Source of the DNA: Phaeosaccion multiseriatum
Taxonomy: Eukaryota; Protista; Ochrophyta, other classes
NCBI GenBank assembly: GCA_965112735.1
Contig: OZ218951.1
Location: 1,364,001-1,428,000, forward strand
Direction: 5' to 3'
DNA: 64,000 bases
This document shows positions 31,527-49,474 of this stretch, in pieces (within the stretch, counting starts at the first letter, position 1; each line of letters begins with the position of its first letter). The notes under the pieces are model-generated. The model worked only from the letters and a program-made list of their open reading frames with translations. It was not told the origin of the DNA and made no database searches. The position numbers and the translations under genes were made by a program.

Positions 31527-37231
<5,705 letters not shown>

Positions 37232-37414
37232 CTCTTTGAATGAGTGAAACTACTGCTTCTGCAGTCAAGGTGTTCGCTTTAAGAGAGTGCATGAGCCTCT
37301 GACGACACGTCCGCCAAGACTCACTACCTTCGCTCCTTCCCCACATACGCCGCTTGTCTGCTCGCATTATCGAGGAGCATTGCTTTTGGGCATGGGTTTG
37401 CACACGTCAACCCC

Positions 37415-37620
37415 TCACGCCGCCTCCACTGCACCATGGTCGTCGTCCTGGAATTCTATCAAGCAGCTCTTAAGCACATTCTCTGTGCCCTCCTCATAGC
37501 ATGATACCTCGATTTCGCTCTCCCCGAACTTCATCTCCACATCCACGCCGCGTTCCTTATAGAGGGCTTTGCCATGTCCATACATCATGTCAATCTGGAT
37601 TCTGGCCACCTCTCGAGTGT
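37415..37620 (-). pseudogene. Orphan 3' fragment resembling an HSPA12/Hsp70-like C-terminus
   Basis: RGVDVEMKFGESEIEVSCYEEGTENVLKSCLIEF resembles the HSPA12 terminal 'EVEMKFG.TEI.V' motif; truncated exactly where the kinase-derived repeat starts (37621). Confidence 0.45.
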
Positions 37621-38565
37621 ACGGGTAACGGCCCCCCAGGCTCGTGGGTGTACATGGAGGGGCATTTTACGCAGATGGCGTGGAGCCCTCCAGTGTGAGC
37701 ACAGCAGGCGCGCTGCCGTCGTCCCTCTTCGCACGATGGGGATAGCATTTTTAGACGGAAAGTGGTGCGAGTGAATGAGTGACTGACTGACTGACTGACT
37801 GAGTGAGTGAGTGACTGAGTAGTCTGAGTGGGTAATGGAAGAGTAGGTTCGACTGAGGGAGTGAGAGGGAGGGAACGAGTGAGCGAGTGGGTGAGCGAGC
37901 GAGAGTGCGAGTGAATGAGAGTGCGTGAGTGAGTGGGTGAGTGAGAGGGAGGGAGTTAGCTAGCGGGTGAGTGAGTGAGTGAGTTGAGTGCCGTGATGAT
38001 GAAGTTAAGGGGGGGGGGGGGAGATGGAAGGCCCTGAGGATGGCGAAAGAGCGGAGCGCAGATGGGGTTACTGGAAGGGCAGAGGTAGCTAGTGAGAGGA
38101 CGTCGGCGAACAGGGGGCAGCAGCGGCCGAAGCAGCTGCTGCTACAACACTGGGAGGAAGTGGGCGTCGAACAAGGGAGCAGGAGCAAGGAAGGAAGGAA
38201 GCAACAAGCAAGCAAGCCCTAGCTAGTGTATGCCAGTCTGACCGTAGTCCCCGAGGGGGATAGGCATAGTTGTTCTACGTGGCTACCTTAAAATTCAGGT
38301 AGTCAGCTGTCTGCTCAGCGATAATAAGAATACATAAGGGTCGGGGAAGATAGGCTGTCGCAGAGGGAGCCTGCATGTCCAACCTGACTGCACCCGCGGT
38401 GTCCACAGCTGCTGGCTGAAGGGGGCTGGTAGCTCAGTGTGTAGAGCGGAAGTCATCTCCGAGCCCGGCCGTGTGAGACAAGCAAGCAGCGTATTCTCGT
38501 GGGAGGAGTGGTAGCCCGAGCGAGGGGGGTGGGCAAGGCTGGGCAACCTTCCCCAAACAACTAGG
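37621..38565 (+). repeat. Direct-repeat copy 1: degenerate copy of kinase segment 47472-47549 fused to a copy of 48025-~48989
   Basis: Near-identical sequence, e.g. gatggcgaaagagcggagcgcagatgggg and ggctaccttaaaattcaggtagtcagctgtctgctcagcga occur in both copies. Confidence 0.95.
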
Positions 38566-39229
38566 ACATCACCGACCAACACAGCTCACTGCCTTTCCCT
38601 TCCAGCAAGCTCTTATATGTATATATAGAAGGGAGGCAAGTGATCACCCTCCCCGAATCGCTCCTCGCCCACTACGCAACCCCACCCACTACTAGTCTAA
38701 TTTACTCCCTCCCTCCACTAATCCAAGCTATACTACTCCCTCCCTTGACTAATCCAAGCCCGTCTCTTGCCTCACGATAGGTCCAAGCAAGCCTTTCCTT
38801 TGGCTCATGGTAGAGTCCCCGCCGCTCCTTCGCTGATTCCGCCCCCCGCCCCCCACCTGGTCCCACGCTCTGCCCACCGACCCAATCTCAGATCAAGACA
38901 ATCACCAGAAGCGCTCCAACTTGCGGTGCCGCCGCTGCTGCTGTATCACCAACTGCTGCTGGGCAACGGCCCGCTGTGCCGCTGTGCTTGTGCCCCGTCT
39001 GTCGCCGCTGTCACTGGCGCTGCAGACCCTCTTGTTGGTGGTGTTGGTGATCCTCCCTGTTGCTTGGTCAGGAAATGTGGCACCCCTCTTCGTTCGTGGG
39101 GTGGTCGTCATGAGCAGCAGGCGGTGGGGTTGGCGGTGCCTGTCTTATGTCGTACTAGAGGTGCGCGAGGCGGGGGGGCGGTGCCGTGTCAAAGAAGCTC
39201 GCGCAACTGGCAAGAGCGAGCGAGGCGCC

Positions 39230-41831
39230 TCACACACCCTAAAGGCTGCACAAGCCATAGACGGTACAGAACAGAGTACAGGCAACCACTACTGCCCACC
39301 ACCGCCATTCATTTCCAAGTAATGTCTAAAGCTTCCTTACATTGTTGGATGGGCGGCTGCCCCCGGCACTGCCCCCCCCCTGCCTCGTGTGAAGGTTGGG
39401 TGGTACCCGCGGGGCCTGTCCCGCAGCGTCGTGGGAGAAGGTGCACGCGTCCCCTTTCGTGCATCCTCCGGCACGCTTATCATATTCACAAGCAAGCAAG
39501 GGGCATGAGCGAGTGGCTCTTTGCATCAGTAGCTGCTCAGGCAGGTGTGACGGGGCGACAGGGTCAGTCCACGTGCAGGGCAGAAAGGATTACTTCGCAC
39601 CAAGAGGGGGAAATGATGAGCAGACACTTACTTTATAGAAATAGCAGGCCCGGGCTCCTCCGACCCTCCTCTCCGGCGACCCTGCCGCAGAGCCGCCTCC
39701 GAATCCTCCAGGAGACTTTCTCTCCGGCGAGCCTGCAGTAGAGCCGCCTCTGGATCCAGGAGACTCCCCATCCCCTCCTGCCGAGGCCTGAGACGGCCTC
39801 CTCGGCCTGCCCCCTCCAGCAGATTGGGGCTCTTCTTCCACCAAGGATTGCTCGGAGGATCGCCTTCCCACTCCTCGCCCACCTCCCCCCCGTCCTCCTC
39901 GTCCTTCTCCTCCTCGTCCTGCTCCTCGTCCTCGCCCTCCTCCTCCTGCTCCTCGTCCTCCTCCTGCTGCTCCTCCTCCTCCTCCTCCTCCTCCTCCTCC
40001 TCCTCCTCCTCCTCCTCCTCCTCCTCCTCCTCCTCCTCCTCCTCCTCCTCCTCCTCCTCCTCCTCCTCCTCCTCCTCCTCCTCCTCCTCCTCCTCCTCCT
40101 CCTCCTCCTCCTCCTCCTCCTCCTCCTCCTCCTCCTCCTCCTCCTCCTCCTCCTCCTCCTCCTCCTCCTCCTCCTCCTCCTCCTCCTCCTCCTCCTCCTC
40201 CTCCTCCTCCTCCTCCTCCTCCTCCTCCTCCTCCTCCTCGCCCCCCCGGCGGGATGATGAACTCCGACTTGTACTCGTCCAAATAGTAGGTGTGGAAGTT
40301 GGGCTCTTCTCGGTCCCTCATGTCCTTGTAATATCTGTTCATTGGCCCCTTCCACGACCACACTTCAACACTCCAGCCCCGCTTCAGCGCGTCCTCGATG
40401 GTCTGTCTGAAGGAGCCCTGTTTACACATAAGCAGGCGTGCAGACACGCGGAAGTGAGTGGGATGGTAGGCGTGCAGAGGGAAGCGATGAGCTACTTCAA
40501 GAATACTGAGGAGCGAGGGGCGGTGGAGGTGAGGGGGGGCAAGAGACTCCTGCCGCCATTTCAAGACAGACGCCCAAGTCATCCCCGTTCCAAGTGGGAC
40601 CACGTACCCAGTCGCCGTCCCCTGTGTTGCCATCCCCGGTGAGTATGGCCATGACGTGGCCTTTGTCCGCCGTGTCGAACTTGTCAAAGTCCGTCCGCGC
40701 AGCTCCCCAGATCTTGCTATCGATGCCCAACTTGTGTTCCCCCCCACCGCTCGACCTCACGACAAAGTGAGTCTTGTAGCCTGCCTCGCCCCATGCCTGG
40801 TCCAACATGGTCTTCTGCCCCTCCGTGCCGCAGGAGCCTGCCACCATCAGCCCCCGCCCCCCAGTCGGACGGTCTCTGCCGTTGGCGACTCGTTCGGTGA
40901 GCGCCTTGGCGTCGATTTTCACACCGTGTCCAAACTGATGTGTCATCGGAACGTAAATGTTGCTGTAGTCCACGTAAATGTGAACCTCATTCTTCCAGCG
41001 CTTCTTCCGCATCTCTTCAAAGTACTCATCTAAGAAGGTGTCCTCGTCGATAATGATGCTTTCAATGAAGCTGACCGCAATGTCCACCGCGTCTTTTGAT
41101 TTGCCCTCAATCCGGAGGTTTACCATCGGCCTTCGCTCCTGCCCCTCTACCACCACTGGTCCTCCGAATGAAAAGAGTACATCCAATTCCCGCTCCTTCC
41201 GGCGCCTATTCTGACCGGCGGTACCATTCGCTTTCCTTCCCCCTTCGAATCGTTCCCGATAGCTCTTAGGAAAAGGCATGTCTCTTACCACGGGTACACC
41301 AGAAGGGCGCGGGGAAGGTGGAATGGCGGGCGGTTCTTGGGCTCGGCTCAGCTGCAGTGCTTCCTCCATGCCCCGCGCCTCCTCCTGCTGGTGCCTCTCC
41401 TCGGCCGCGGCCTCGTCCGCGAGGCTCAAGCGCAATGCTTGCTCCACCACCCGCGCCTCCTCCTGCTGCCTCTCCGCGGCCGCGACCTCGTCCGCAAGGC
41501 GGAGCTGCAACACCCGCGCCTCCTCCTGCCGGTGCGTCCTCGCGGCCGCGGCTTCGCCCGCAAGGCTCAACTGCAGTGCTTCCTCCACCACCCGCGCCTC
41601 CTCCTCCTCGTCCCTCCCCGCCGCGGCGGGCATGCCGTCCGCAAGGCTCCGCTGCAATGCTTGGTCCACCTCCCGCGCCTCCTCCTGCTCGTCCCTCTCC
41701 GCCGCCGCGGGGATCTCATCCGCCAGGCTCAAATGTATAGCACGCTCCAGCTGTGCTTCCTCGTCCAGGATCCTGCTGAGGCAACGTACCCCAGCCGCCC
41801 GAGCCGCGTGTGCTTGCGCATCTTCAGCCAT
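39230..41831 (-). CDS. UIM-repeat / KH / NYN (LabA-DUF88 PIN-like) ribonuclease / poly-Gly-RGG / CCCH zinc-finger protein; exons 41831-40608, 40417-39632, 39475-39341, possibly 39238-39230
   Basis: Five to six EEAR..EEAL.LSL UIMs; KH-like segment ending LRIEGKSKDAVDIAVSFIESII; VHIYVDYSNI, GIDSKI, AILTGDGN..W|GSFRQTIEDALKRGWSVEVWSW; spliced CYFYK|RAGGCTKGDACTFSH (C-x8-C-x5-C-x3-H). All junctions are in frame. Confidence 0.8.
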
Positions 41832-42290
41832 GGTCGTGCAAATGCACTTCGCTACAAATAATAGCCGTAGTGAGTTTCTCCATACGGGGAAATCGCTGCA
41901 ATCCCATTGTTACGGACCAGAACAAAGACCTCCAGGAGGCGGAACAAACGGATGAAACTGTGAATCCAGCCGGGGGGAGGAGGGGGGAGGGGAGAGGGAC
42001 TTTTTATTTATTTTAGGAGGGCCGAGTTGGCGCCCGGCCCCACTCTTCCCCTTTCCGCTCCAACTGAACCACTGCCACATCACCTCCATCCGCTTCTTCA
42101 CAAATTTCCCTTTTCCTGCTGTATACGACCTGCAGGTCTCTGCATCCGTCCCGTCCTCCTCTCCTGCACCTGACGAATCCGCCCGCGGATTACAGTTACA
42201 GAATTTGTTGCTTCGGGAGAACATCTTTCCTACAACAAGAGGATTCACAAGAGAGAAGCCGCCCCCGCCGCCGCCGCAGGAGATTGGACA

Positions 42291-42872
42291 ATGCCCTCTT
42301 GTCCAAGAGAAAACGAATGCATCACACCCGTCTGCAGCCGGAGCCACTCTTTGGGGCAGCTCTGTGAGACGCCAAACGCCTGCCGCAGCCAGACATGGTG
42401 CACGCGTCGCCACCCCGGTGCTCTTTGGTACAAGGAGGGGGACAATGTCCTTTACTGCGCAGGCCTCGGGCACACACCCCACCTTGCAACCGTGATTGTA
42501 ATCCCTCCAATCTCTACAAGGAGAGACGACACGCGCGATGCAGTGCGCTTCATCATCGAGCTCAAGACGAGCAATAATGAAATAATGAACGTGGCCCTCA
42601 GCAACCTCGAGACACCAGGACAAGCTCAATCTGGGGGGGGGGGGCGAGGAATATATGCGCCGCAATCCAGCAGTGCCGCCCGGAGATCCGGCGGACGGCG
42701 CCCGGGCACTCCAGGAGGAGGAGGAGGAGGAGGAGGAGGAGGAGGAGGAGGAGGAGGAGGAGGAGGAGGGGGGCCCTCAAACCCTCCAGCAGGACAGAGA
42801 CCTCCTCAGGTAACAACGAGACAAACGGATTATTATTTTGTAGTCGTCGTTGCTCATGCTGGTCGCTACTAA
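42291..42872 (+). CDS. Small ORF with two CCCH-type (Nab2-like) zinc knuckles, a beta-rich SH3/Tudor-like segment and a Gly tail; may be partial
   Basis: CPRENECITPVCSRSH and CETPNACRSQTWCTRRH, then YKEGDNVLY..ATVIVI..RFIIEL..MNVALSNL. Confidence 0.5.
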   Translation: MPSCPRENECITPVCSRSHSLGQLCETPNACRSQTWCTRRHPGALWYKEGDNVLYCAGLGHTPHLATVIVIPPISTRRDDTRDAVRFIIELKTSNNEIMNVALSNLETPGQAQSGGGGRGIYAPQSSSAARRSGGRRPGTPGGGGGGGGGGGGGGGGGGGGPSNPPAGQRPPQVTTRQTDYYFVVVVAHAGRY

Positions 42873-42896
42873 GCTTTCGCTCCAGCAGCACTCCAA

Positions 42897-42930
42897 GGCC
42901 GCACCGATAAAATATTTCGGAAAGCGTCGC
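42897..42930 (-). repeat. 34-bp perfect inverted repeat, arm A
   Basis: ggccgcaccgataaaatatttcggaaagcgtcgc is the exact reverse complement of 44635-44668. Confidence 0.95.
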
Positions 42931-43299
42931 CGCCCGCGGCGGAATTTTTTTGGCCGCCGATAAACCGTAGAAGGCGAAAAAACCGTAGAAAGGCCTCCGA
43001 GTGCGCTGAGAGAGGGCCTTAGGTCGTGTACAGTGTGAGCAGAGAAGAAAGCACACCTCCCCGACTCTAAAAATCGATAAAAACAAGGTTCACGAGTAAT
43101 CAATTCGAATTTCAATTTGGGAGGGGCAGGGGGAGAACCTTTTTTTGTCTCAGGCATCGGCTCCAGACTGGCCTAGAAGCCTATGCTCTAGGCCCTAGGC
43201 CGAGCGGCCTACGCCCGCTCTAGGCCGGCCATTTTTTCTCCCTAGGCCGGCGGTTCTAGGCCGAGGCCTCGACCTATCTGATTAGTAATTACGGCCGGC

Positions 43300-44450
43300 G
43301 GGAGGGAGGGAGGGAGGGAGGGAGGGAGGGAGGGAGGGAGGGAGGGAGGGAGGGAGGGAGAGAGGGAGGGAGGGAGGGAGGGAGGGAGGGAGGGAGGGAG
43401 GGAGGGAGGGAGGGAGGGAGGGAGGGAGGGAGGGAGGGAGGGAGGGAGGGAGGGAGGGAGGGAGGGAGGGAGGGAGGGAGGGAGGGAGGGAGGGAGGGAG
43501 GGAGGGAGGGAGGGAGGGAGGGAGGGAGGGAGGGAGGGAGGGAGGGAGGGAGGGAGGGAGGGAGGGAGGGAGGGAGGGAGGGAGGGAGGGAGGGAGGGAG
43601 GGAGGGAGGGAGGGAGGGAGGGAGGGAGGGAGGGAGGGAGGGAGGGAGGGAGGGAGGGAGGGAGGGAGGGAGGGAGGGAGGGAGGGAGGGAGGGAGGGAG
43701 GGAGGGAGGGAGGGAGGGAGGGAGGGAGGGAGGGAGGGAGGGAGGGAGGGAGGGAGGGAGGGAGGGAGGGAGGGAGGGAGGGAGGGAGGGAGGGAGGGAG
43801 GGAGGGAGGGAGGGAGGGAGGGAGGGAGGGAGGGAGGGAGGGAGGGAGGGAGGGAGGGAGGGAGGGAGGGAGGGAGGGAGGGAGGGAGGGAGGGAGGGAG
43901 GGAGGGAGGGAGGGAGGGAGGGAGGGAGGGAGGGAGGGAGGGAGGGAGGGAGGGAGGGAGGGAGGGAGGGAGGGAGGGAGGGAGGGAGGGAGGGAGGGAG
44001 GGAGGGAGGGAGGGAGGGAGGGAGGGAGGGAGGGAGGGAGGGAGGGAGGGAGGGAGGGAGGGAGGGAGGGAGGGAGGGAGGGAGGGAGGGAGGGAGGGAG
44101 GGAGGGAGGGAGGGAGGGAGGGAGGGAGGGAGGGAGGGAGGGAGGGAGGGAGGGAGGGAGGGAGGGAGGGAGGGAGGGAGGGAGGGAGGGAGGGAGGGAG
44201 GGAGGGAGGGAGGGAGGGAGGGAGGGAGGGAGGGAGGGAGGGAGGGAGGGAGGGAGGGAGGGAGGGAGGGAGGGAGGGAGGGAGGGAGGGAGGGAGGGAG
44301 GGAGGGAGGGAGGGAGGGAGGGAGGGAGGGAGGGAGGGAGGGAGGGAGGGAGGGAGGGAGGGAGGGAGGGAGGGAGGGAGGGAGGGAGGGAGGGAGGGAG
44401 GGAGGGAGGGAGGGGGGAGGGAGGGAGGGAGGGAGGGAGGGAGGGAGGGA
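43300..44450. repeat. (GGGA)n microsatellite, ~1.15 kb
   Basis: Nearly uninterrupted tetranucleotide run. Confidence 0.98.
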
Positions 44451-44634
44451 AGGTGATTTGGGCGCTGTGCTGTGGGCTGTTTGGACCTAATTTGGGCTAA
44501 TGTTAGCATAATAGAGGCCTACACACACTCATACTACAAGAGGGACACTCATTGGGGGGTGTACAGGGCTGTCTACGGTTTATTTTTGCCCCGACCGTTT
44601 TTTCCGCCCGCCCGCGGCAGATTTTTCCAAATGT

Positions 44635-44668
44635 GCGACGCTTTCCGAAATATTTTATCGGTGCGGCC
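44635..44668 (+). repeat. 34-bp perfect inverted repeat, arm B, ~70 bp upstream of the DnaJ-kinase ATG
   Basis: gcgacgctttccgaaatattttatcggtgcggcc. Confidence 0.95.
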
Positions 44669-44741
44669 CAATGTATGCCTGACCATCAGCCCTCATCTCC
44701 CTCTCGTCAACCTCCTGCTCCTTCATCGCTACCCGCCCCTC

Positions 44742-46712
44742 ATGCCAGGCCAGAGGAACGGGGGGGCACGGCCGAGGGAGGGGTGAAAGAAGGACGGGAG
44801 GAGAAGCCGGGGCAGACAGGGAAATTGCGTATGATGTAAGTGCCACCTGTGCTGGGCCCACCCTTTCGGCAGTACGACCCTGACCATACCACACACCTTG
44901 AACACGACGCAACAGGTACCTCTGAAGGACCTAATGCTAGGGACGCATGGATCTCTCAACTACGTTCGCCAGTTGGTGTGCCAAACATGCGACGGGGACG
45001 AGTTTCGCCGCCCAATTTGTGAGAGTTCTGACTGAGGCCGGTGGAAACAACACTCCGCATCTTAGTGCAGAAGAGCTGGGCGCATGGAAAGATTATCAAA
45101 TTCACAGGAAAGGGCGACGTGCAACCCGGTGAGCGCGCTGCTCTGGCACGGCTGTAGAAAGTACCACAGGAGCGACGAATCAATCGGTCACGTCAATGCG
45201 CTGCCCGTAGTGGCGACCTGATGCACACACACGTGAATGCACGCACACCACACCTACTCTTAATGCATGATCAGGGTTTTCTACTCCCGGCGATCTGTTG
45301 GTGCGGCTCAACCAGCAGCCACATCCGCGCTTCACCCGCGGCTCGCCCTCGACCGGCTCGCCTGACTCGTCCACCCTCACCATGGCGCTGGACGTGACCG
45401 AACAGCAGATTCAGAGCGGCTGCAATCTGACCTACGAGCACCTCGACGGAGGCATGCGGCAGCTCCACATCCGACCGGGGCAGGTAAGTCCGTGGAGGTG
45501 TTGGCGGCGCCCGTGGGGGGGAAGGAGGTCAGTGGAGAGTGTTGTATGTCGATGCCCTCTGTGATCTAGGATCCACCCCGGTGGGCACGCGAACGTCTGA
45601 CGCATCTCAGGAGCTCCGGCGCCCCCTTCAGAGTCTGGTTGTGTAAGGATAGAGCGGCGAGCAGGCTTGCTCACGGGTTGTAAATAGTCACTAGGACTAC
45701 TAGACAGGTGTGCGTTACTGGTAGCTATGTGTATTTGTACAGTGTCAGTAGTCTTAGTGAACTATTTACAACCCGTGAGCAAGCCTGCTCGCCGCTCTAT
45801 CCTTACACAACCAGACTCTTGAAGACTCTGAAGGGGGCGACGGAGCTCCTGAGATGCGTCAGACGCTCGCGTGCCCACCGGGGTGGAACCTAGATCACAG
45901 ATGGCATCGACAGACAACAAGAGTCCCGGCAGCAGAGCTGGGGCCGATCGTAGTTGCGTAGCTTCGGGGAACCCCTCATGTTCCCTTCAACTTGCTCATG
46001 GGCCTTGTTTCATGCAATACACTCCCCGGCCGGCTGCCCCACCTCCTCAGGTAACGGGCGAGGGCTACACCATGACCGTTCCCGAGGAAGGCATGCCCAA
46101 GGTGCAAGGCAGGGACCCCCTCCGTGGCGACTTGGTCATCCGCTTCAGGCAAGTCCCGTCAGCAGCAGCAGCGGCACGAGCACCACCCAGTGGCGCACCC
46201 ACTCCCACCGCATTTGATGATTTGCTGAGAGCCGGCGAGGCGAGAGTGATGGAAGCAGGGGGACGACAGAGCCGCGGTGAGCGAGGAGCCCTGCGGGCAG
46301 CGCTGAGGAGTGTATATGGTGAACTGGAGCTGCTTGGACAGCAACTCGGCGGTCAACTCGAAAGGCTGCGCGGCGAGGCGCGAGTGATGCGGGCCGGGCT
46401 GCAAGAGAAGGATGGTCAGCTCGAGGCGCTTCGTGCCGCGCAGCAAGAGAGAGTGCAGGAGCTGGAGGCTCTAAGAGCAGCACAGCGAGAGAGTGCTGGG
46501 GAGATGGAGGCATTGAAAGGCACGGTGCGAGACATCACTGGCCAGCTTGAGGCTTCGAGTGCCGCGCAGCGTCAGAAAGAGGGTGAGGCGCGAGTGATGC
46601 GGGCCGGGCTGCAAGAGAAGGATGATCAGCTCCAGGCACTGCGTTCCGCGCAGCAAGAGAGAGTGCGGGACTGGAGGCTCTAAGAGCGGCACAGCGAGAG
46701 AGTGCTGGGGAG
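44742..46712 (+). pseudogene. Frameshifted 5' portion of the kinase gene: DnaJ/Hsp40 zinc-finger and C-terminal substrate-binding domain, then coiled coil (exons 44742-44835, 44916-45128, 45275-45483, 46051-)
   Basis: VPLKDLMLG..YVRQLVCQTCDG, ILVQKSWAHGKIIKFTGKGDVQP|GFSTPGDLLVRLNQQPHPRFTR, EHLDG, EEGMP..RGDLVIRF. Frame breaks near 44760, 45030 and 46670. Confidence 0.7.
45540..45919. mobile_element. 380-bp foldback MITE (TGTTG...CAACA) with 4-bp TSD AGAG, in an intron; Ginger-like termini
   Basis: Arms of ~165 bp are near-perfect reverse complements; AGAG at 45536-45539 and 45920-45923. Confidence 0.85.
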
Positions 46713-46750
46713 ATGGAGGCTTTGCGAGGCACGGTGAGAGACTTGCGCGC
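46375..46750 (+). repeat. 210-bp (70-codon) tandem duplication within the coiled-coil coding region
   Basis: gaggcgcgagtgatgcgggccgggctgcaagagaaggatg at 46375 and 46585. Confidence 0.9.
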
Positions 46751-48017
46751 AGCACAGAGAGAAAGGGACGTCGAGTCGACAGCACTGAGGGCAAGACTGC
46801 GTGAACGAGAAAGAGACATGCCCGCCGGGCGTGCAGAGGGGCTGCCGCCACCACCCCCGTATCAAGAGAGGCAACCGACGGTGCGCCTCTTCACCCTTTC
46901 ACAGATGGAGGCGTGTGTCGACTTTGCGGACATGGATCTTGTGCTGGGCAGGGGGGGCTTCGGGGGGGTGTATCGAGGACGTGGCGTGGCCTTGGGACTG
47001 GGGGGCGCGCAGGAGGTGGCCGTGAAGAAGCTCGATGGGGACAGCACGCAGACTCTGGCCAACTTCCGGAAGGAGGTGCGGGTGTTGAGCGAATGCAGGC
47101 ATGAGAACCTCCTGCCGCTGCTGGGCATTTCCCTCGATCCGGAAATCTGCCTGGTGTACCCACTCATGAGCGGGGGCAGCTTGGAGGCGTATTACCCAAC
47201 GGGCACCTCGCGAGCGCCACTGCCCGCTCGGAGGCGCTTGTGTATAGCACTCGGCGTTGCCAAAGCCCTGATGTACCTGCACACCGACATGGGCTCCAAG
47301 CCCAGCATCATTCACCGGGACGTCAAGCCCCACAACATCCTGTTGGAGGAGGTGGTGGAGGAGGAGGGGGCTGAGGGGGGCGAGAGGGGTGGCGGAGGCG
47401 TGCCCGCCTGCCTGGGAGTCCGTCTGGGTGACGTGGGCATTGCCCGGGTCACTGATTCGGCGATGACGAGGACGGGTAACGGCCCCCAAGGCTCGGGGGT
47501 GTACATGGACGGGCATTACGCAGATGGCGCGGAGCCCCAGTGTGAGCACGATGTGTACTCCCTGGGCGTGGTGATGCTGGAGCTCGTCATGGGCAAACTT
47601 GCGCGCAGGGAAAATCTGAACCACGACGCCAAGGAGCAGCTGCTCTCGGACGACGGTTTGACGAGGGTGGCGGATACAGCCATCTCCTGGACGGGGAAGG
47701 CCAAAGAGGTGCTCGCACAACAGGCACACGCTTGCCTGCAGCGCAGTCTGCAAGCCAGGCCGGTACTGAGCGAGCTTGTTCGCACCCTGGCCGCCGCATT
47801 CGAGGTGCCTCGGCCGGCTCGGATGCGCGAGTGTAATGTATGCTATAAGGACCTCTCGGGGGACAGCCAAGAAGCTCGCTTCTTGCCGTGCTTCCATTCC
47901 TGCACGTGCGAGACCTGCGGGCTGGCGCTGAAGGACCTCGAGAAACCCTGTCTCCTCTGTAGGGCGACCATCGAAAGCGTGGAGATAGGACACTTCGGAG
48001 TAACCAACGCAAGATGA
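46713..48017 (+). CDS. IRAK/Pelle/RLCK-like protein kinase with a C-terminal C3HC4 RING; intronless ORF
   Basis: RLFTLSQME, LGRGGFGGVYRG, VAVKKL, FRKEVRVLSECRHENLLPLLG, LVYPLMSGGSL, IALGVAKALMYLH, IIHRDVKPHNILL, DVG, DVYSLGVVMLELVMG; RING CNVC...LPCFHSCTCETC...CLLCR. Confidence 0.9.
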   Translation: MEALRGTVRDLRAAQRERDVESTALRARLRERERDMPAGRAEGLPPPPPYQERQPTVRLFTLSQMEACVDFADMDLVLGRGGFGGVYRGRGVALGLGGAQEVAVKKLDGDSTQTLANFRKEVRVLSECRHENLLPLLGISLDPEICLVYPLMSGGSLEAYYPTGTSRAPLPARRRLCIALGVAKALMYLHTDMGSKPSIIHRDVKPHNILLEEVVEEEGAEGGERGGGGVPACLGVRLGDVGIARVTDSAMTRTGNGPQGSGVYMDGHYADGAEPQCEHDVYSLGVVMLELVMGKLARRENLNHDAKEQLLSDDGLTRVADTAISWTGKAKEVLAQQAHACLQRSLQARPVLSELVRTLAAAFEVPRPARMRECNVCYKDLSGDSQEARFLPCFHSCTCETCGLALKDLEKPCLLCRATIESVEIGHFGVTNAR

Positions 48018-48024
48018 TAAGAGT

Positions 48025-48989
48025 AGCAGGCGCGCTGCCGTCGTCCCTCGCACGATGGGGATTGCATTTTAAGTGAGTGAGTAAAGGGAGGGAGGGAGGG
48101 AGGGAGGGAGGGAGGGAGGGAGGGAGGGAGGGAGGGAGGGAGGGAGGGAGGGAGGGAGGGAGGGAGTGAGTGGTGGTCTGAGTGGGTAATTGAAGAGTAG
48201 GTTCGACTGAGAGAGTGAGAGGGAGGGAACGAGTGAGCGAGTGGGTGAGCGAGCGAGTGGGTGAGCGAGCGAGAGTGCGAGTGAGTGAGAGTGCGTGAGT
48301 GAGTGAGTGAGTGAGTGAGTGAGTGAGAGGGAGGGAGTTAGCGGGTGAGTGAGCAAGTGGGCGGCTGAGTGAGTGAGTTGAGTGCGTGATGATGAAGTTA
48401 AGGGGGGCGGGGGAGATGGAAGGCCCTGAGGATGGCGAAAGAGCGGAGCGCAGATGGGGTTGCTGGAAGGGCAGAGTTAGCTAGTGAGAGGACGTCGGCG
48501 AACAGGGGGCAGCAGCGGCCGAAGCAGCTGCTGCTACAACACTGGAGGAAGTGGGCGTCGAAAAAGGAAGGAGCAAGGACGGAAGCCTGGAAGGAAGGAT
48601 GGAAGGAAGCAATAAACAAGAAGGGAAGAGGACAGTGTATGCCAGTCTGACCTTAGTCCCCGAGGGGGATAGTCATAGTTGTTCTACGCGGCTACCTTAA
48701 AATTCAGGTAGTCAGCTGTCTGCTCAGCGAGAATAAGAATACATAAGGGTCGGGGAAGATAGGCTGTCGCAGAGGGAGCCTGCATGTCCAACCTGACTGC
48801 ACCCGCGGTGTCCACAGCTGCTGGCTGAAGAGGGCCGGTAGCTCAGTGTATAGAGCGGAAGTCGTCATCTCCCGAGCCCGGCCGTGTGAGACAAGCAAGC
48901 AGCGTATTCTCGTGAGGGGAGTGGTAGCACGAGCGAGGGGGGTGGGCAAGGCTGGGCAACCCCGCGGCCTAGGGCAGACGCCAACTAGG
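48025..48989 (+). repeat. Direct-repeat copy 2 (3' flank of the kinase gene)
   Basis: Homologous to 37703-38565. Confidence 0.95.
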
Positions 48990-49474
48990 CGGACGGTGGG
49001 AGTGCCCAGAGTGCAAAGAGTATTCAGTTTTAAGCAGTGTATTGCAGGGGATTGGAAGTGAGGAGTAGACTTGGTATAGGTGTGCTGCTACCCACTGGCT
49101 GGGCGGCACCACGCACGCGCCCACGGTTACTGGGAGGCTGCCTAGAGGCGGGCTAGAGGCCGCCTAGGACTGAAAAAGTGAGCGGCCTAGAGCGGCCGGA
49201 GGCCGAGCGGCCTAGCGGCCTAGAGCAAAACCGCTAGGCGTGCATGGGGCTGGGGCTGAGCACAGCTCGCAGAGGGGCGGAGCACAGCATTGAACGCAGT
49301 CCGTTCGCTCCCCGCTCGCAGCTTTCATTTCAGTTTGGCTCTTTTCTAGGCACTAGGCACAGCTTCGACGTCAAGGCTTGGCATTGCTTGTTCAGTTTTT
49401 TTGCTCAGCCCCTCCTAACCACAACCCCCCAGCCATCTTCATTATCTTATCTTCCCTCTTCTTCCTCCTCCTCG

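What the first reader, a model, noticed from the sequence alone, without database searches (positions are those of the whole stretch)
37415..49246. Candidate mobile innate-immunity-like island: ubiquitin-binding NYN RNase next to an IRAK/Pelle-like kinase-RING E3 ligase
Seen: a ~12-kb rearranged block between ordinary housekeeping genes. It holds a UIMx5-6/KH/NYN/RGG/CCCH gene (-), a double-CCCH ORF and a DnaJ-C/coiled-coil/kinase/RING gene (+), with the RNase and kinase genes divergent, plus direct repeats, inverted termini and gene fragments. Known: in animals IRAK kinases, ubiquitin chains and PIN/NYN RNases with ubiquitin-binding, KH or CCCH modules (Regnase-1, N4BP1, KHNYN) act together in immune RNA decay. 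Inference: a self-contained writer (RING/kinase) plus reader-effector (UIM-RNase) cassette, assembled independently in a protist and possibly moved or shuffled by transposons. The Hsp40-type domain could act as a sensor or decoy.
Basis: partly seen in the sequence, partly recalled or inferred. Interest (0 to 1): 0.85.

Follow-up and report, generated by a model that had tools for sequence, protein, structure and literature searches.

The report
Algal ubiquitin-linked RNase beside kinase-RING gene
A golden-brown alga has a real gene for an RNA-cutting enzyme with ubiquitin-binding repeats, from a rare protist family that is often fused to ubiquitin ligases; it sits beside an immune-type kinase-ligase gene, but nothing shows that the two work together or that the block is mobile.

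Summary
The interpretation as a mobile immune cassette does not.

**RNase gene (minus strand, 41831-39338).** It is an intact three-exon gene. It encodes UIM-like repeats, a degenerate KH domain, a NYN nuclease, about 90 glycines plus RGG, and one CCCH finger.
- The nuclease is of the MARF1/LabA type (Pfam PF01936). It is not the Regnase/N4BP1/KHNYN type.
- Only 13 cluster representatives among 1.84 billion proteins are related.
- Many of the relatives found carry a RING, a U-box or UIMs. The tie between this RNase family and ubiquitin is therefore a family trait. This is the most interesting result.

**Kinase gene (plus strand).** It has a J-less DnaJ_C domain in three collinear exon pieces, a coiled coil, an RLK/Pelle/IRAK-like kinase and a C3HC4_3 RING.
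- One missing base at 46670/46671 puts the DnaJ_C/coiled-coil part and the kinase/RING part in different frames. A single protein is unproven.

**Repeats.**
- The "direct repeats" are a decayed partial copy of the kinase 3' end.
- The "inverted termini" belong to two small repeated elements.
- I found no transposase.

**Linkage and expression.**
- None of 16 foreign loci pairs the two gene families. Only five of these give 10 kb or more of DNA around the gene.
- No RNA data exist.
- The scan had noted both genes before, on this same stretch.

The parts
39338..41831 (-). UIM-KH-NYN-polyGly/RGG-CCCH gene. Model: exons 41831-40608, 40417-39632 and 39475-39338 (alternative in-frame acceptor at 39532); 719 aa.
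   Evidence: GT..AG sites with matching phases. The exon 1/2 junction is confirmed by collinear alignment with relatives. GC by codon position is coding-like, 0.69/0.44/0.74.
41328..41780 (-). Six tandem units of 26-27 aa; five carry a UIM core.
   Evidence: Pfam UIM 22.9 bits for unit 1. The minimal motif is found only here in the window. The DNA units are 64-77% alike (D8).
41037..41291 (-). Degenerate KH-like domain.
   Evidence: It aligns with the Pfam KH_1 domains of relatives. The family profile hits KH structures at E 1e-7. The window's own GXXG loop is lost.
40247..40991 (-). NYN nuclease domain (PF01936 type), split by a 190-nt intron at 40418-40607.
   Evidence: phmmer E 1.7e-15 to relatives. 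The relatives pass the Pfam NYN cut-off. Family model pLDDT 92; Z 16.7 to 2qip and 14.4-14.8 to MARF1 NYN. The conserved D, N, E, D and TGDG residues are present.
39632..40246 (-). Run of about 90 glycines, encoded by (GGA)n at 39871-40239, followed by an RGG-rich tract.
39430..39650 (-). CCCH zinc finger C-x8-C-x5-C-x3-H across the last intron.
   Evidence: Partial Pfam zf-CCCH-type hits, E 1e-4 to 6e-3, on exon 3 alone; pattern.
42291..42872 (+). ORF with two CCCH-like patterns. Its status as a gene is unproven.
   Evidence: The patterns are non-random within the window. No Pfam or atlas hit. GC by codon position 0.56/0.57/0.64.
42897..44668 (.). Non-autonomous element bounded by perfect 34-nt inverted repeats; it holds (GGGA)288.
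   Evidence: Its right end is laid at 5-10 times single-copy depth.
45032..46150 (+). DnaJ_C (Hsp40 client-binding) domain in three exon pieces: 45032-45128, 45276-45484 and 46051 onward. There is no J domain.
   Evidence: Collinear Pfam DnaJ_C hits of 14.5, 17.5 and 14.7 bits. Intron phases are consistent. Hsp40 fragment 2q2g is the only PDB hit. No HPD motif in 41900-45300.
45540..45919 (.). 380-nt near-palindrome inside the DnaJ_C intron; a repeated foldback element.
   Evidence: 5-7 times single-copy depth.
46151..46940 (+). Coiled-coil region with a recent tandem duplication (46372-46533 and 46582-46742). One base is missing at 46670/46671, which changes the frame.
   Evidence: the reads show no indel there.
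46941..47789 (+). RLK/Pelle/IRAK-like protein kinase domain.
   Evidence: Pfam 1.6e-28. Best solved relatives are BAK1, SymRK, FERONIA, BIK1 and IRAK4. The glycine loop, VAVK, HRD, DVG and GxxGYxD-like motifs were read from the translation.
47826..48017 (+). C-terminal RING (zf-C3HC4_3) and stop codon.
   Evidence: Pfam 5.5e-8. Closest to the RINGs of brown-algal ankyrin-kinase-RING proteins.
37614..38548 (+). Decayed partial copy of 47467-48961 (mid-kinase to the 3' flank). It has a 487-bp gap and 14 nt of filler.
   Evidence: The joint 47537>48025 with the same 14 letters lies at single-copy depth in four read sets.

Best explanation
This is an ordinary nuclear region of a brown-alga-related microalga. 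It holds two neighbouring genes that belong to separate gene families.

**Gene 1** is an intact member of a rare, apparently undescribed protist family of KH-NYN endoribonucleases.
- Its nuclease is of the MARF1/LabA type.
- Other family members are repeatedly fused to ubiquitin modules (RING, U-box or UIM).
- Here five or six N-terminal UIMs replace the ligase domain.
- The likely mechanism, which is inferred, is as follows. The tandem UIMs dock the protein on poly-ubiquitinated partners or ribonucleoprotein particles. The KH remnant, the RGG tract and the CCCH finger hold the RNA. The NYN site, which keeps the family's conserved D, N, E, D and D residues, cuts it.

**Gene 2** is one member of an expanded algal family built as variable N-terminus, coiled coil, RLK/Pelle-like kinase and RING.
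- In this copy a J-less DnaJ_C domain lies upstream of the coiled coil.
- A one-base loss in a recent internal duplication leaves it open whether the gene is still one protein.

**The rest of the block**
- The long direct repeat is a local segmental duplication remnant.
- The inverted repeats belong to small non-autonomous elements.
- The adjacency of the two genes is most likely fortuitous.
For: - Gene models, splice phases and coding-like GC by codon position.
- Rare family: 13 representatives among 1.84 billion.
- Relatives carry Pfam KH_1, NYN and CCCH, plus RING or U-box or UIM repeats (L006, L012, L013).
- Conserved catalytic-type residues.
- Family model pLDDT 92, with Z 14-17 to NYN structures and Z 10-12 to KH structures.
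- Kinase class.
- Paralogous kinase unitigs in the reads and scan notes on LRR- and ankyrin-kinase-RING paralogs.
- No co-occurrence of the two families in 16 foreign loci.
- The left repeat is a kinase pseudogene fragment, present in the reads at single-copy depth.
- TIR element and palindrome at multi-copy depth.
- No viral relatives.
Against: - No RNA data, so expression, splice sites and co-regulation are untested.
- Only five foreign loci give 10 kb or more of DNA around the gene, and all are from distant organisms. No close relative's genome, nor the rest of this genome, could be searched.
- Ubiquitin binding and RNase activity are inferred from motifs and fold only.
- The structure model is of the closest homologue (P0121), not of the window protein. 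The window protein alone folded poorly.
- A RING ligase beside a multi-UIM protein is what a writer/reader pair would look like.
Confidence: 0.7

Rival explanations
1. Writer/reader immune cassette. The neighbouring kinase-RING protein builds ubiquitin chains, and the UIM-RNase reads them to trigger RNA decay. The two divergent genes would form a co-regulated functional unit.
For: - The genes are adjacent and divergent.
- The NYN family is tied to ubiquitin ligase domains in relatives, several of them with the same Pfam RING type, zf-C3HC4_3.
- The kinase family has variable sensor-like N-termini and RLK/IRAK-type kinases.
Against: - No locus among 16 from other organisms holds both families.
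- The neighbour's RING is closest to brown-algal kinase-RING proteins, not to the RINGs of the NYN family.
- About 3 kb separates the genes, with a repeat element, a 1.15-kb microsatellite and another ORF in between.
- The kinase gene has a frame break.
- No expression data.
Confidence: 0.12
2. Mobile or transposon-delivered island. The 12-kb block moved as a unit, bounded by direct repeats and inverted termini.
For: - About 1-kb direct repeats lie roughly 10 kb apart.
- Repeated small elements lie inside the block.
Against: - The left repeat is a truncated copy of the kinase gene's own 3' end and flank, with a 487-bp gap. It is not a terminal repeat of an element.
- The inverted repeats bound only a 1.77-kb and a 0.38-kb element.
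- No transposase, integrase or reverse transcriptase domain was found in the ORFs tested.
- Read depth over the genes is single-copy.
- GC content matches the flanks.
- No viral relatives.
Confidence: 0.04
3. The plus-strand locus is now two products or a pseudogene. A truncated DnaJ_C/coiled-coil peptide ends at 46680, and a separate kinase-RING product starts at the ATG at 46713. Alternatively there is no functional product at all.
For: - One base is missing at 46670/46671 relative to the sister repeat.
- The reads show no alternative allele there.
- An ATG-initiated ORF of 434 aa runs 46713-48017.
- Standalone kinase-RING relatives of 327-607 aa exist.
Against: - Both frames keep coding-like composition.
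- Many GT..AG pairs could bridge the shift, including a GTGAGG donor at 46583.
- The listed read pieces leave 46615-46690 uncovered (table 8), so the base call rests on depth alone.
Confidence: 0.4

Closest known systems
MARF1 NYN domain and bacterial LabA-like NYN proteins (PDB 5YAA, 6FDL, 2QIP; Pfam PF01936)
   Same: Same fold. Z 14.4-16.7 over 146-158 aligned residues. Relatives pass the Pfam NYN cut-off. An Asp after the first strand and an Asp in the G-D-G motif are conserved.
   Different: The second motif is T-G-D-G-N rather than the usual S-G-D-x-D, as I recall it. The domain is preceded by a KH domain and UIMs and followed by CCCH. MARF1 instead has RRM and LOTUS domains (my own knowledge). 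Sequence identity to MARF1 is only about 10%.
N4BP1 and KHNYN (animal KH + PIN-like nuclease + ubiquitin/NEDD8-binding CoCUN/CUBAN)
   Same: Same design logic and domain order: KH, then nuclease, combined with a ubiquitin-family reader. PMC7226360 describes this group as combining RNA-metabolism modules with ubiquitin/NEDD8 recognition.
   Different: No PF11977 (Regnase-type) hit at E 0.1 or below in the window ORFs or in the ten relatives scanned at that cut-off, and no Regnase, N4BP1 or KHNYN structure among the matches shown. The resemblance is analogy or very distant clan-level kinship, not membership.
Regnase-1 (ZC3H12A)
   Same: A PIN-like RNase followed by a CCCH finger, and linked to ubiquitin (my own knowledge).
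   Different: Different nuclease family. It has no KH and no UIM array.
RNA-binding E3 ligases such as MEX3 (KH-KH-RING)
   Same: Relatives of the window gene combine KH with a C-terminal RING of the same Pfam type. MEX-3C KH domains match the family model at Z 10.5.
   Different: MEX3 has no nuclease. The window gene itself has no RING.
Brown-algal ankyrin-kinase-RING proteins (e.g. P0005, 'receptor protein kinase-like', Ectocarpus siliculosus) and Prymnesium parvum kinase-RING P0007
   Same: Kinase plus C-terminal zf-C3HC4_3 RING in the same order. Identity is 38-41% over 79-93% of the query.
   Different: Their N-terminus is ankyrin repeats (or nothing), not DnaJ_C plus coiled coil.
Plant RLK/Pelle and animal IRAK kinases
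   Same: These are the best solved relatives: BAK1 at 3e-30, IRAK4 at 6e-21. The kinase is RD-type and has the GxxGYxD-like activation-segment motif.
   Different: No death domain, no transmembrane or extracellular part was found, and a RING is fused at the C-terminus.
Hsp40/DnaJ C-terminal client-binding domain
   Same: Collinear match to Pfam DnaJ_C positions 31-148. The P-G-D-L...H-P-R-F-T-R junction is shared with a solved Hsp40.
   Different: No J domain (no HPD motif). Profile positions 1-30 were not found. Each piece is below the family cut-off on its own.

Membership tests
NYN nuclease, Pfam PF01936 (MARF1/LabA type) | Significant match to the family profile | tested here: inconclusive
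   The window ORFs give no NYN hit at E 0.1 or below. Their relatives (E 1.7e-15 to 6e-4) score 33-36 bits against a cut-off of 24.2. Membership therefore rests on transitive homology.
NYN nuclease, Pfam PF01936 (MARF1/LabA type) | PIN-like alpha/beta fold | tested here: met
   Model of the closest homologue built with the family alignment, which includes both window exon pieces: pLDDT 92. Z 16.7 to 2qip and Z 14.4-14.8 to MARF1 NYN.
NYN nuclease, Pfam PF01936 (MARF1/LabA type) | Conserved acidic active-site residues | tested here: met
   D, N, E, D and T-G-D-G are invariant or nearly invariant in the family and present in the window protein. Their geometry in the model was not inspected.
Regnase/N4BP1/KHNYN nuclease (Pfam PF11977) | Match to the RNase_Zc3h12a profile or to its structures | tested here: not met
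   No PF11977 hit at E 0.1 or below in the window ORFs or in the ten relatives scanned at that cut-off. None among the 50 Foldseek matches or 50 re-aligned entries shown.
UIM (ubiquitin-interacting motif) | Acidic run, then hydrophobic-x-x-Ala-x-x-x-Ser-x-x-acidic | tested here: met
   Unit 1 scores 22.9 bits against a cut-off of 21. Units 2, 3, 5 and 6 fit only the minimal motif; unit 4 does not. Binding was not tested.
Type I KH domain | beta-alpha-alpha-beta-beta-alpha fold with a GXXG loop | tested here: inconclusive
   Relatives have Pfam KH_1 and the fold. The window protein aligns but has an insertion and no GXXG.
CCCH zinc finger | C-x8-C-x5-C-x3-H spacing | tested here: met
   The spliced model gives the exact spacing. 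Exon 3 alone hits five CCCH models at E 1e-4 to 6e-3.
RLK/Pelle/IRAK kinase group | Kinase domain closest to this group, with catalytic motifs intact | tested here: met
   The 56 best solved matches are all RLK, RLCK or IRAK kinases. The glycine loop, VAVK, HRD and DVG motifs are present.
RLK/Pelle/IRAK kinase group | Death domain (IRAK/Pelle), or a transmembrane segment plus ectodomain (RLK) | tested here: not met
   No such Pfam domain in the upstream pieces. The upstream part is DnaJ_C and coiled coil.
RING E3 ligase (zf-C3HC4_3) | Cross-brace Cys/His pattern matching the profile | tested here: met
   32.9 bits against a cut-off of 27.
Hsp40/DnaJ co-chaperone | J domain with an HPD motif | tested here: not met
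   No HPD in any plus-strand frame of 41900-45300.
Hsp40/DnaJ co-chaperone | C-terminal client-binding domain (DnaJ_C) | tested here: inconclusive
   Three collinear pieces score 14.5, 17.5 and 14.7 bits, each below the 26.6 cut-off. Together they cover profile positions 31-148.
Mobile genetic element or genomic island | Terminal repeats at the block ends and a mobility gene | tested here: not met
   The repeats are a gene-fragment duplication and two small internal elements. No mobility domain was found.
Conserved two-gene cassette | Recurrent linkage of the two families in other genomes | tested here: not met
   0 of 16 loci. The test is weak because only five give 10 kb or more of DNA around the gene.

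The most novel reading that the evidence does not exclude
KH-NYN nucleases of the MARF1 type, wired to ubiquitin through RING, U-box or UIM modules, would form a widespread and undescribed protist system of ubiquitin-gated RNA decay. It would parallel animal N4BP1, KHNYN and Regnase-1 but be built independently. In this alga the UIM version would read chains written by the adjacent stress- or pathogen-sensing RLK/Pelle-type kinase-RING ligase.
Probability: 0.1. Interest if true: 0.8.

Novelty: new variant of a known kind. Interest (0 to 1): 0.5.

Why it matters
In animals, RNA-cutting enzymes that read ubiquitin or NEDD8 (N4BP1, KHNYN, Regnase-1) are checkpoints of inflammation and antiviral defence. 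This work shows that a different nuclease lineage, the MARF1/LabA-type NYN, has been joined again and again to ubiquitin ligase or ubiquitin-binding modules. The relatives come from green algae, stramenopiles and uncultured protists.

That gives a testable case for convergent, or very old, coupling of ubiquitin signalling to RNA decay outside animals. It also gives a small, tractable protein family for testing it.

The kinase-RING gene adds one more N-terminal module, a J-less Hsp40 client-binding domain, to an algal family that looks like a set of diversified intracellular sensors. The mobile immune cassette idea should be dropped unless new data appear.

Tried and rejected
**Searches that found nothing or failed**
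- Pfam on the whole ORFs found no NYN or KH.
- The word-based homologue search with the 444-aa ORF found nothing, probably because the UIM repeats are low-complexity.
- phmmer against PDB with the single sequence found nothing.
- The single-sequence AlphaFold model was unusable, pLDDT 38.
- The atlas gave only a weak NYN lead, score 0.76.
A narrower alignment worked.
- Exact-product look-ups of the two window ORFs found no record.

**Ideas tested and dropped**
- I looked for a RING exon downstream of the CCCH exon, since relatives end in a RING. None is present on the minus strand of 37300-39420.
- I looked for a J domain upstream of DnaJ_C. There is none.
- I asked whether the neighbour's RING derives from a fission of a KH-NYN-RING gene. 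It does not: it groups with brown-algal kinase-RING proteins.
- I asked whether the block is viral. There are no relatives in viral contigs or phage records.
- I enumerated introns that could bridge the frame shift. There are 332 in-frame GT..AG pairs and none is decisive.

**Reads**
- The four read sets proved to be genomic unitigs of one sample, so they say nothing about expression.

**Left out**
- The spliced proteins were not sent to the structure or library tools, because they have no reference.
Full report
**Setting.** The window is eukaryotic, spliced DNA with 55-64% G+C. Earlier notes of this scan describe the organism as an unsampled golden-brown, brown-alga-related microalga. The best relatives of the kinase gene are brown algae, which fits. 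The scan had already noted both genes on this same stretch (s1-345994, s1-346054).

**The RNase gene (minus strand).**

*Gene model.* An ATG at 41831 opens a long ORF. Two introns have GT..AG ends and matching phases: 40607-40418 and 39631-39476. The result is a 719-residue model.
- The first junction is confirmed independently. After the T-G-D-G-N motif, relatives continue with S-F, a G-W-x-V-E-V-W-S-W strand and L-D-x-Y. This is exactly what the second window exon encodes.
- GC by codon position is coding-like: 0.69/0.44/0.74.

*UIM repeats.* The N-terminus holds six tandem units of 26-27 residues.
- Unit 1 passes the Pfam UIM cut-off, 22.9 bits against 21.
- Units 2, 3, 5 and 6 keep the minimal core: hydrophobic-x-x-Ala-x-x-x-Ser with flanking acids.
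- My regular expression found that core four times in the six-frame translation of the whole 64-kb window, all inside this array. It missed unit 3, which I read by eye.
- The DNA units are only 64-77% alike, yet the core is kept. This argues for selection on the motif.

*KH and NYN domains.* Pfam sees neither directly.
- An exhaustive phmmer search of 1.84 billion cluster representatives with residues 180-408 found just 13 relatives, with E from 1.7e-15 to 6e-4.
- Several of these carry Pfam KH_1 and NYN (PF01936) above the curated cut-offs.
- A profile of the family hits solved KH domains at E 1e-7 and the LabA-like NYN protein 2qip at E 0.04.
- An AlphaFold model of the closest homologue (P0121, Tetraselmis) was built on a 22-row alignment that includes both window exon pieces. 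It reached pLDDT 92 and pTM 0.88.
- Structure matches of that model:

| Structure | Z | Aligned residues | rmsd |
|---|---|---|---|
| 2qip (LabA-like NYN) | 16.7 | 158 | 3.7 |
| MARF1 NYN, mouse and human | 14.4-14.8 | 146-147 | 2.7-2.8 |
| FUBP1 KH2 | 11.9 | 64 | 0.9 |

- No Regnase, N4BP1 or KHNYN structure appeared among the matches shown.
- The family's invariant or near-invariant residues are all present in the window protein. They are the Asp and Asn after strand 1, a Glu and an Asp in the G-E-x-x-x-x-D segment, T-G-D-G, and the Trp of G-W. An active nuclease is therefore likely. This is inferred, not shown.
- The window's KH has lost its GXXG loop and has an insertion, so it may be only a structural remnant.

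*C-terminal part.* Downstream come about 90 glycines encoded by (GGA)n, an RGG tract and one CCCH finger with canonical spacing. No RING exon follows.

**What the relatives show.**

| Feature beside the NYN domain | Relatives |
|---|---|
| C-terminal RING, mostly zf-C3HC4_3 | P0122, P0125, P0126, P0129, P0154, L013/L015/L016 |
| U-box | P0128 and its cluster, P0133 (Incisomonas), L008; L007 only weakly (E 0.03, below cut-off) and L009 by eye |
| N-terminal UIM-like repeats in front of the KH-like region and NYN | L012 (Pfam UIM 20.6 bits, just under the 21 cut-off); L006 and L013 by eye |
| RanBP2/NZF-type finger | P0152 (E 0.002) |

- Named sources are the green algae Tetraselmis and Chlamydomonas euryale and the stramenopile Incisomonas marina.
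- The coupling of this nuclease to ubiquitin is thus a property of the family. The UIM-KH-NYN layout is not unique to this alga.
- I found no paper on this family in the held library.
- The known parallel is the animal group of N4BP1 and KHNYN, described as combining RNA-metabolism modules with ubiquitin or NEDD8 recognition (PMC7226360). Their nuclease belongs to another Pfam family.

**The kinase-RING gene (plus strand).**

*Kinase and RING.* ORF 46626-48014 holds a kinase (Pfam 1.6e-28) and a zf-C3HC4_3 RING (5.5e-8).
- Its best solved relatives are all RLK, RLCK or IRAK kinases: BAK1 at 3e-30, SymRK, FERONIA, BIK1, and IRAK4 at 6e-21. Other TKL kinases follow only later.
- The catalytic motifs are intact.
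- Its closest homologues are brown-algal ankyrin-kinase-RING proteins, 38-41% identical over 79-93% of the query. A Prymnesium parvum kinase-RING protein also matches, at 31% identity.
- Scan notes list LRR- and ankyrin-kinase-RING paralogues elsewhere in this genome. The reads contain diverged paralogous kinase unitigs.

*DnaJ_C.* Upstream, three ORF pieces match Pfam DnaJ_C collinearly, at profile positions 31-63, 61-118 and 117-148.
- They are joined by introns with consistent phases, 45129-45275 and 45485-46050.
- The only PDB hit of the middle piece is an Hsp40 client-binding fragment.
- There is no J domain.

*Frame break.* The coiled-coil region contains a tandem duplication of about 160-170 bp whose copies lie 210 bp apart and are 92% alike.
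- The second copy lacks one G at 46670/46671.
- As a result the DnaJ_C/coiled-coil frame stops at 46680, while the kinase/RING frame is open from 46626.
- The read sets report no indel there. However, the listed contig pieces leave 46615-46690 uncovered.
- Many GT..AG pairs could bridge the shift and none is compelling.
- The ancestral gene was very probably one DnaJ_C, coiled-coil, kinase and RING chain. Its present state is open: it could be spliced around the shift, split into two products, or decaying.

**Repeats and mobility.**
- The long direct repeat is 37614-38548 against 47467-48961.
- The left copy starts in the middle of the kinase domain. It lacks 487 bp, which are replaced by 14 nt of filler, and its reading frame is decayed.
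- The same joint, with the same 14 letters, is present at single-copy depth in four read sets of one sample. It is therefore real and not an assembly artefact.
- This is the signature of a local segmental duplication with deletion, not of element termini.
- Perfect 34-nt inverted repeats bound a 1.77-kb element at 42897-44668, filled mostly by (GGGA)288.
- A 380-nt near-palindrome sits in the DnaJ_C intron.
- The palindrome and the right end of the 1.77-kb element are laid at 5-10 times single-copy depth, so both look like members of repeated families.
- The ORFs tested carry no transposase, integrase or reverse transcriptase domain.
- No viral or phage relatives exist in the collections searched.

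**Linkage of the two genes.**
- I fetched five loci that give 10 kb or more of DNA around the gene. Three lie around KH-NYN relatives (two with 10 kb on each side, one a 10-kb contig). Two lie around kinase-RING relatives in Ectocarpus and Prymnesium.
- I also fetched eleven short metagenome contigs.
- tblastn found the partner family in none of the 16.
- Within the window there is no further copy of either gene apart from the pseudogene fragment.
- The neighbour's RING groups with brown-algal kinase-RING proteins and not with the NYN family's RINGs. A fission origin is therefore unlikely.
- The test is weak, because the organisms are distant and most contigs are short. What evidence there is goes against a conserved cassette.
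- No RNA run holds the stretch.

**The double-CCCH ORF (42291-42872).**
- Apart from the NYN finger and microsatellite artefacts, its two CCCH-like patterns are the only ones in the six-frame translation of the window. They are probably not chance.
- There is no Pfam or atlas support, and GC by codon position is not coding-like.
- Its status stays open.

**Verdict.**
- Nothing supports a mobile, self-contained immune cassette.
- Shown: the gene structures of the RNase, the domain identities, the rarity and architectures of the family, and the nature of the repeats.
- Inferred: ubiquitin binding, nuclease activity, and any link to the neighbouring gene.

Noticed in passing
42897-44668: A 1.77-kb element bounded by perfect 34-nt inverted repeats. 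Its body is mostly a (GGGA)288 microsatellite. Its right end is laid at 5-10 times single-copy read depth, so it belongs to a repeated family.
   Followed up: partly
45540-45919: A 380-nt near-perfect palindrome inside an intron of the DnaJ_C region, laid at 5-7 times single-copy depth. It looks like a foldback or MITE-like element.
   Followed up: partly
39475-39650: The last intron of the RNase gene has two in-frame acceptors; exon 3 can start at 39532 or at 39475. Both give a C-x8-C-x5-C-x3-H finger, because a first-cysteine segment occurs twice: once at the end of exon 2 and once inside the intron.
   Followed up: no
39871-40239: About 90 consecutive glycine codons, (GGA)n, lie inside a coding exon, between the NYN domain and the RGG tract.
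   Followed up: no
46904-46907: A paralogous kinase unitig (11 differences in 128 nt) loses all likeness exactly at 46907. This is 3 nt after an acceptor-like site (a pyrimidine run followed by CAG). It may be the exon-shuffling boundary at which the family swaps its N-terminal modules.
   Followed up: no
33889-34503: The left flank has a Dzip1-like N-terminal domain hit (E 1.6e-4, below the cut-off, probably one exon). The ARM call on the right flank found no Pfam support.
   Followed up: partly
L014:158-1891 and P0152: One NYN relative has a LOTUS-like stretch (by eye only), several CCCH fingers and NYN, which recalls MARF1. Another relative starts with a RanBP2/NZF-type zinc finger (E 0.002), a fold that binds ubiquitin in some proteins.
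   Followed up: no
Same genome, another piece (scan note s1-354579): An unchecked first-stage note reports a HEPN RNase with 8-10 UIMs elsewhere in this genome. If real, UIM-tagged RNases would be a recurring theme in this alga.
   Followed up: no
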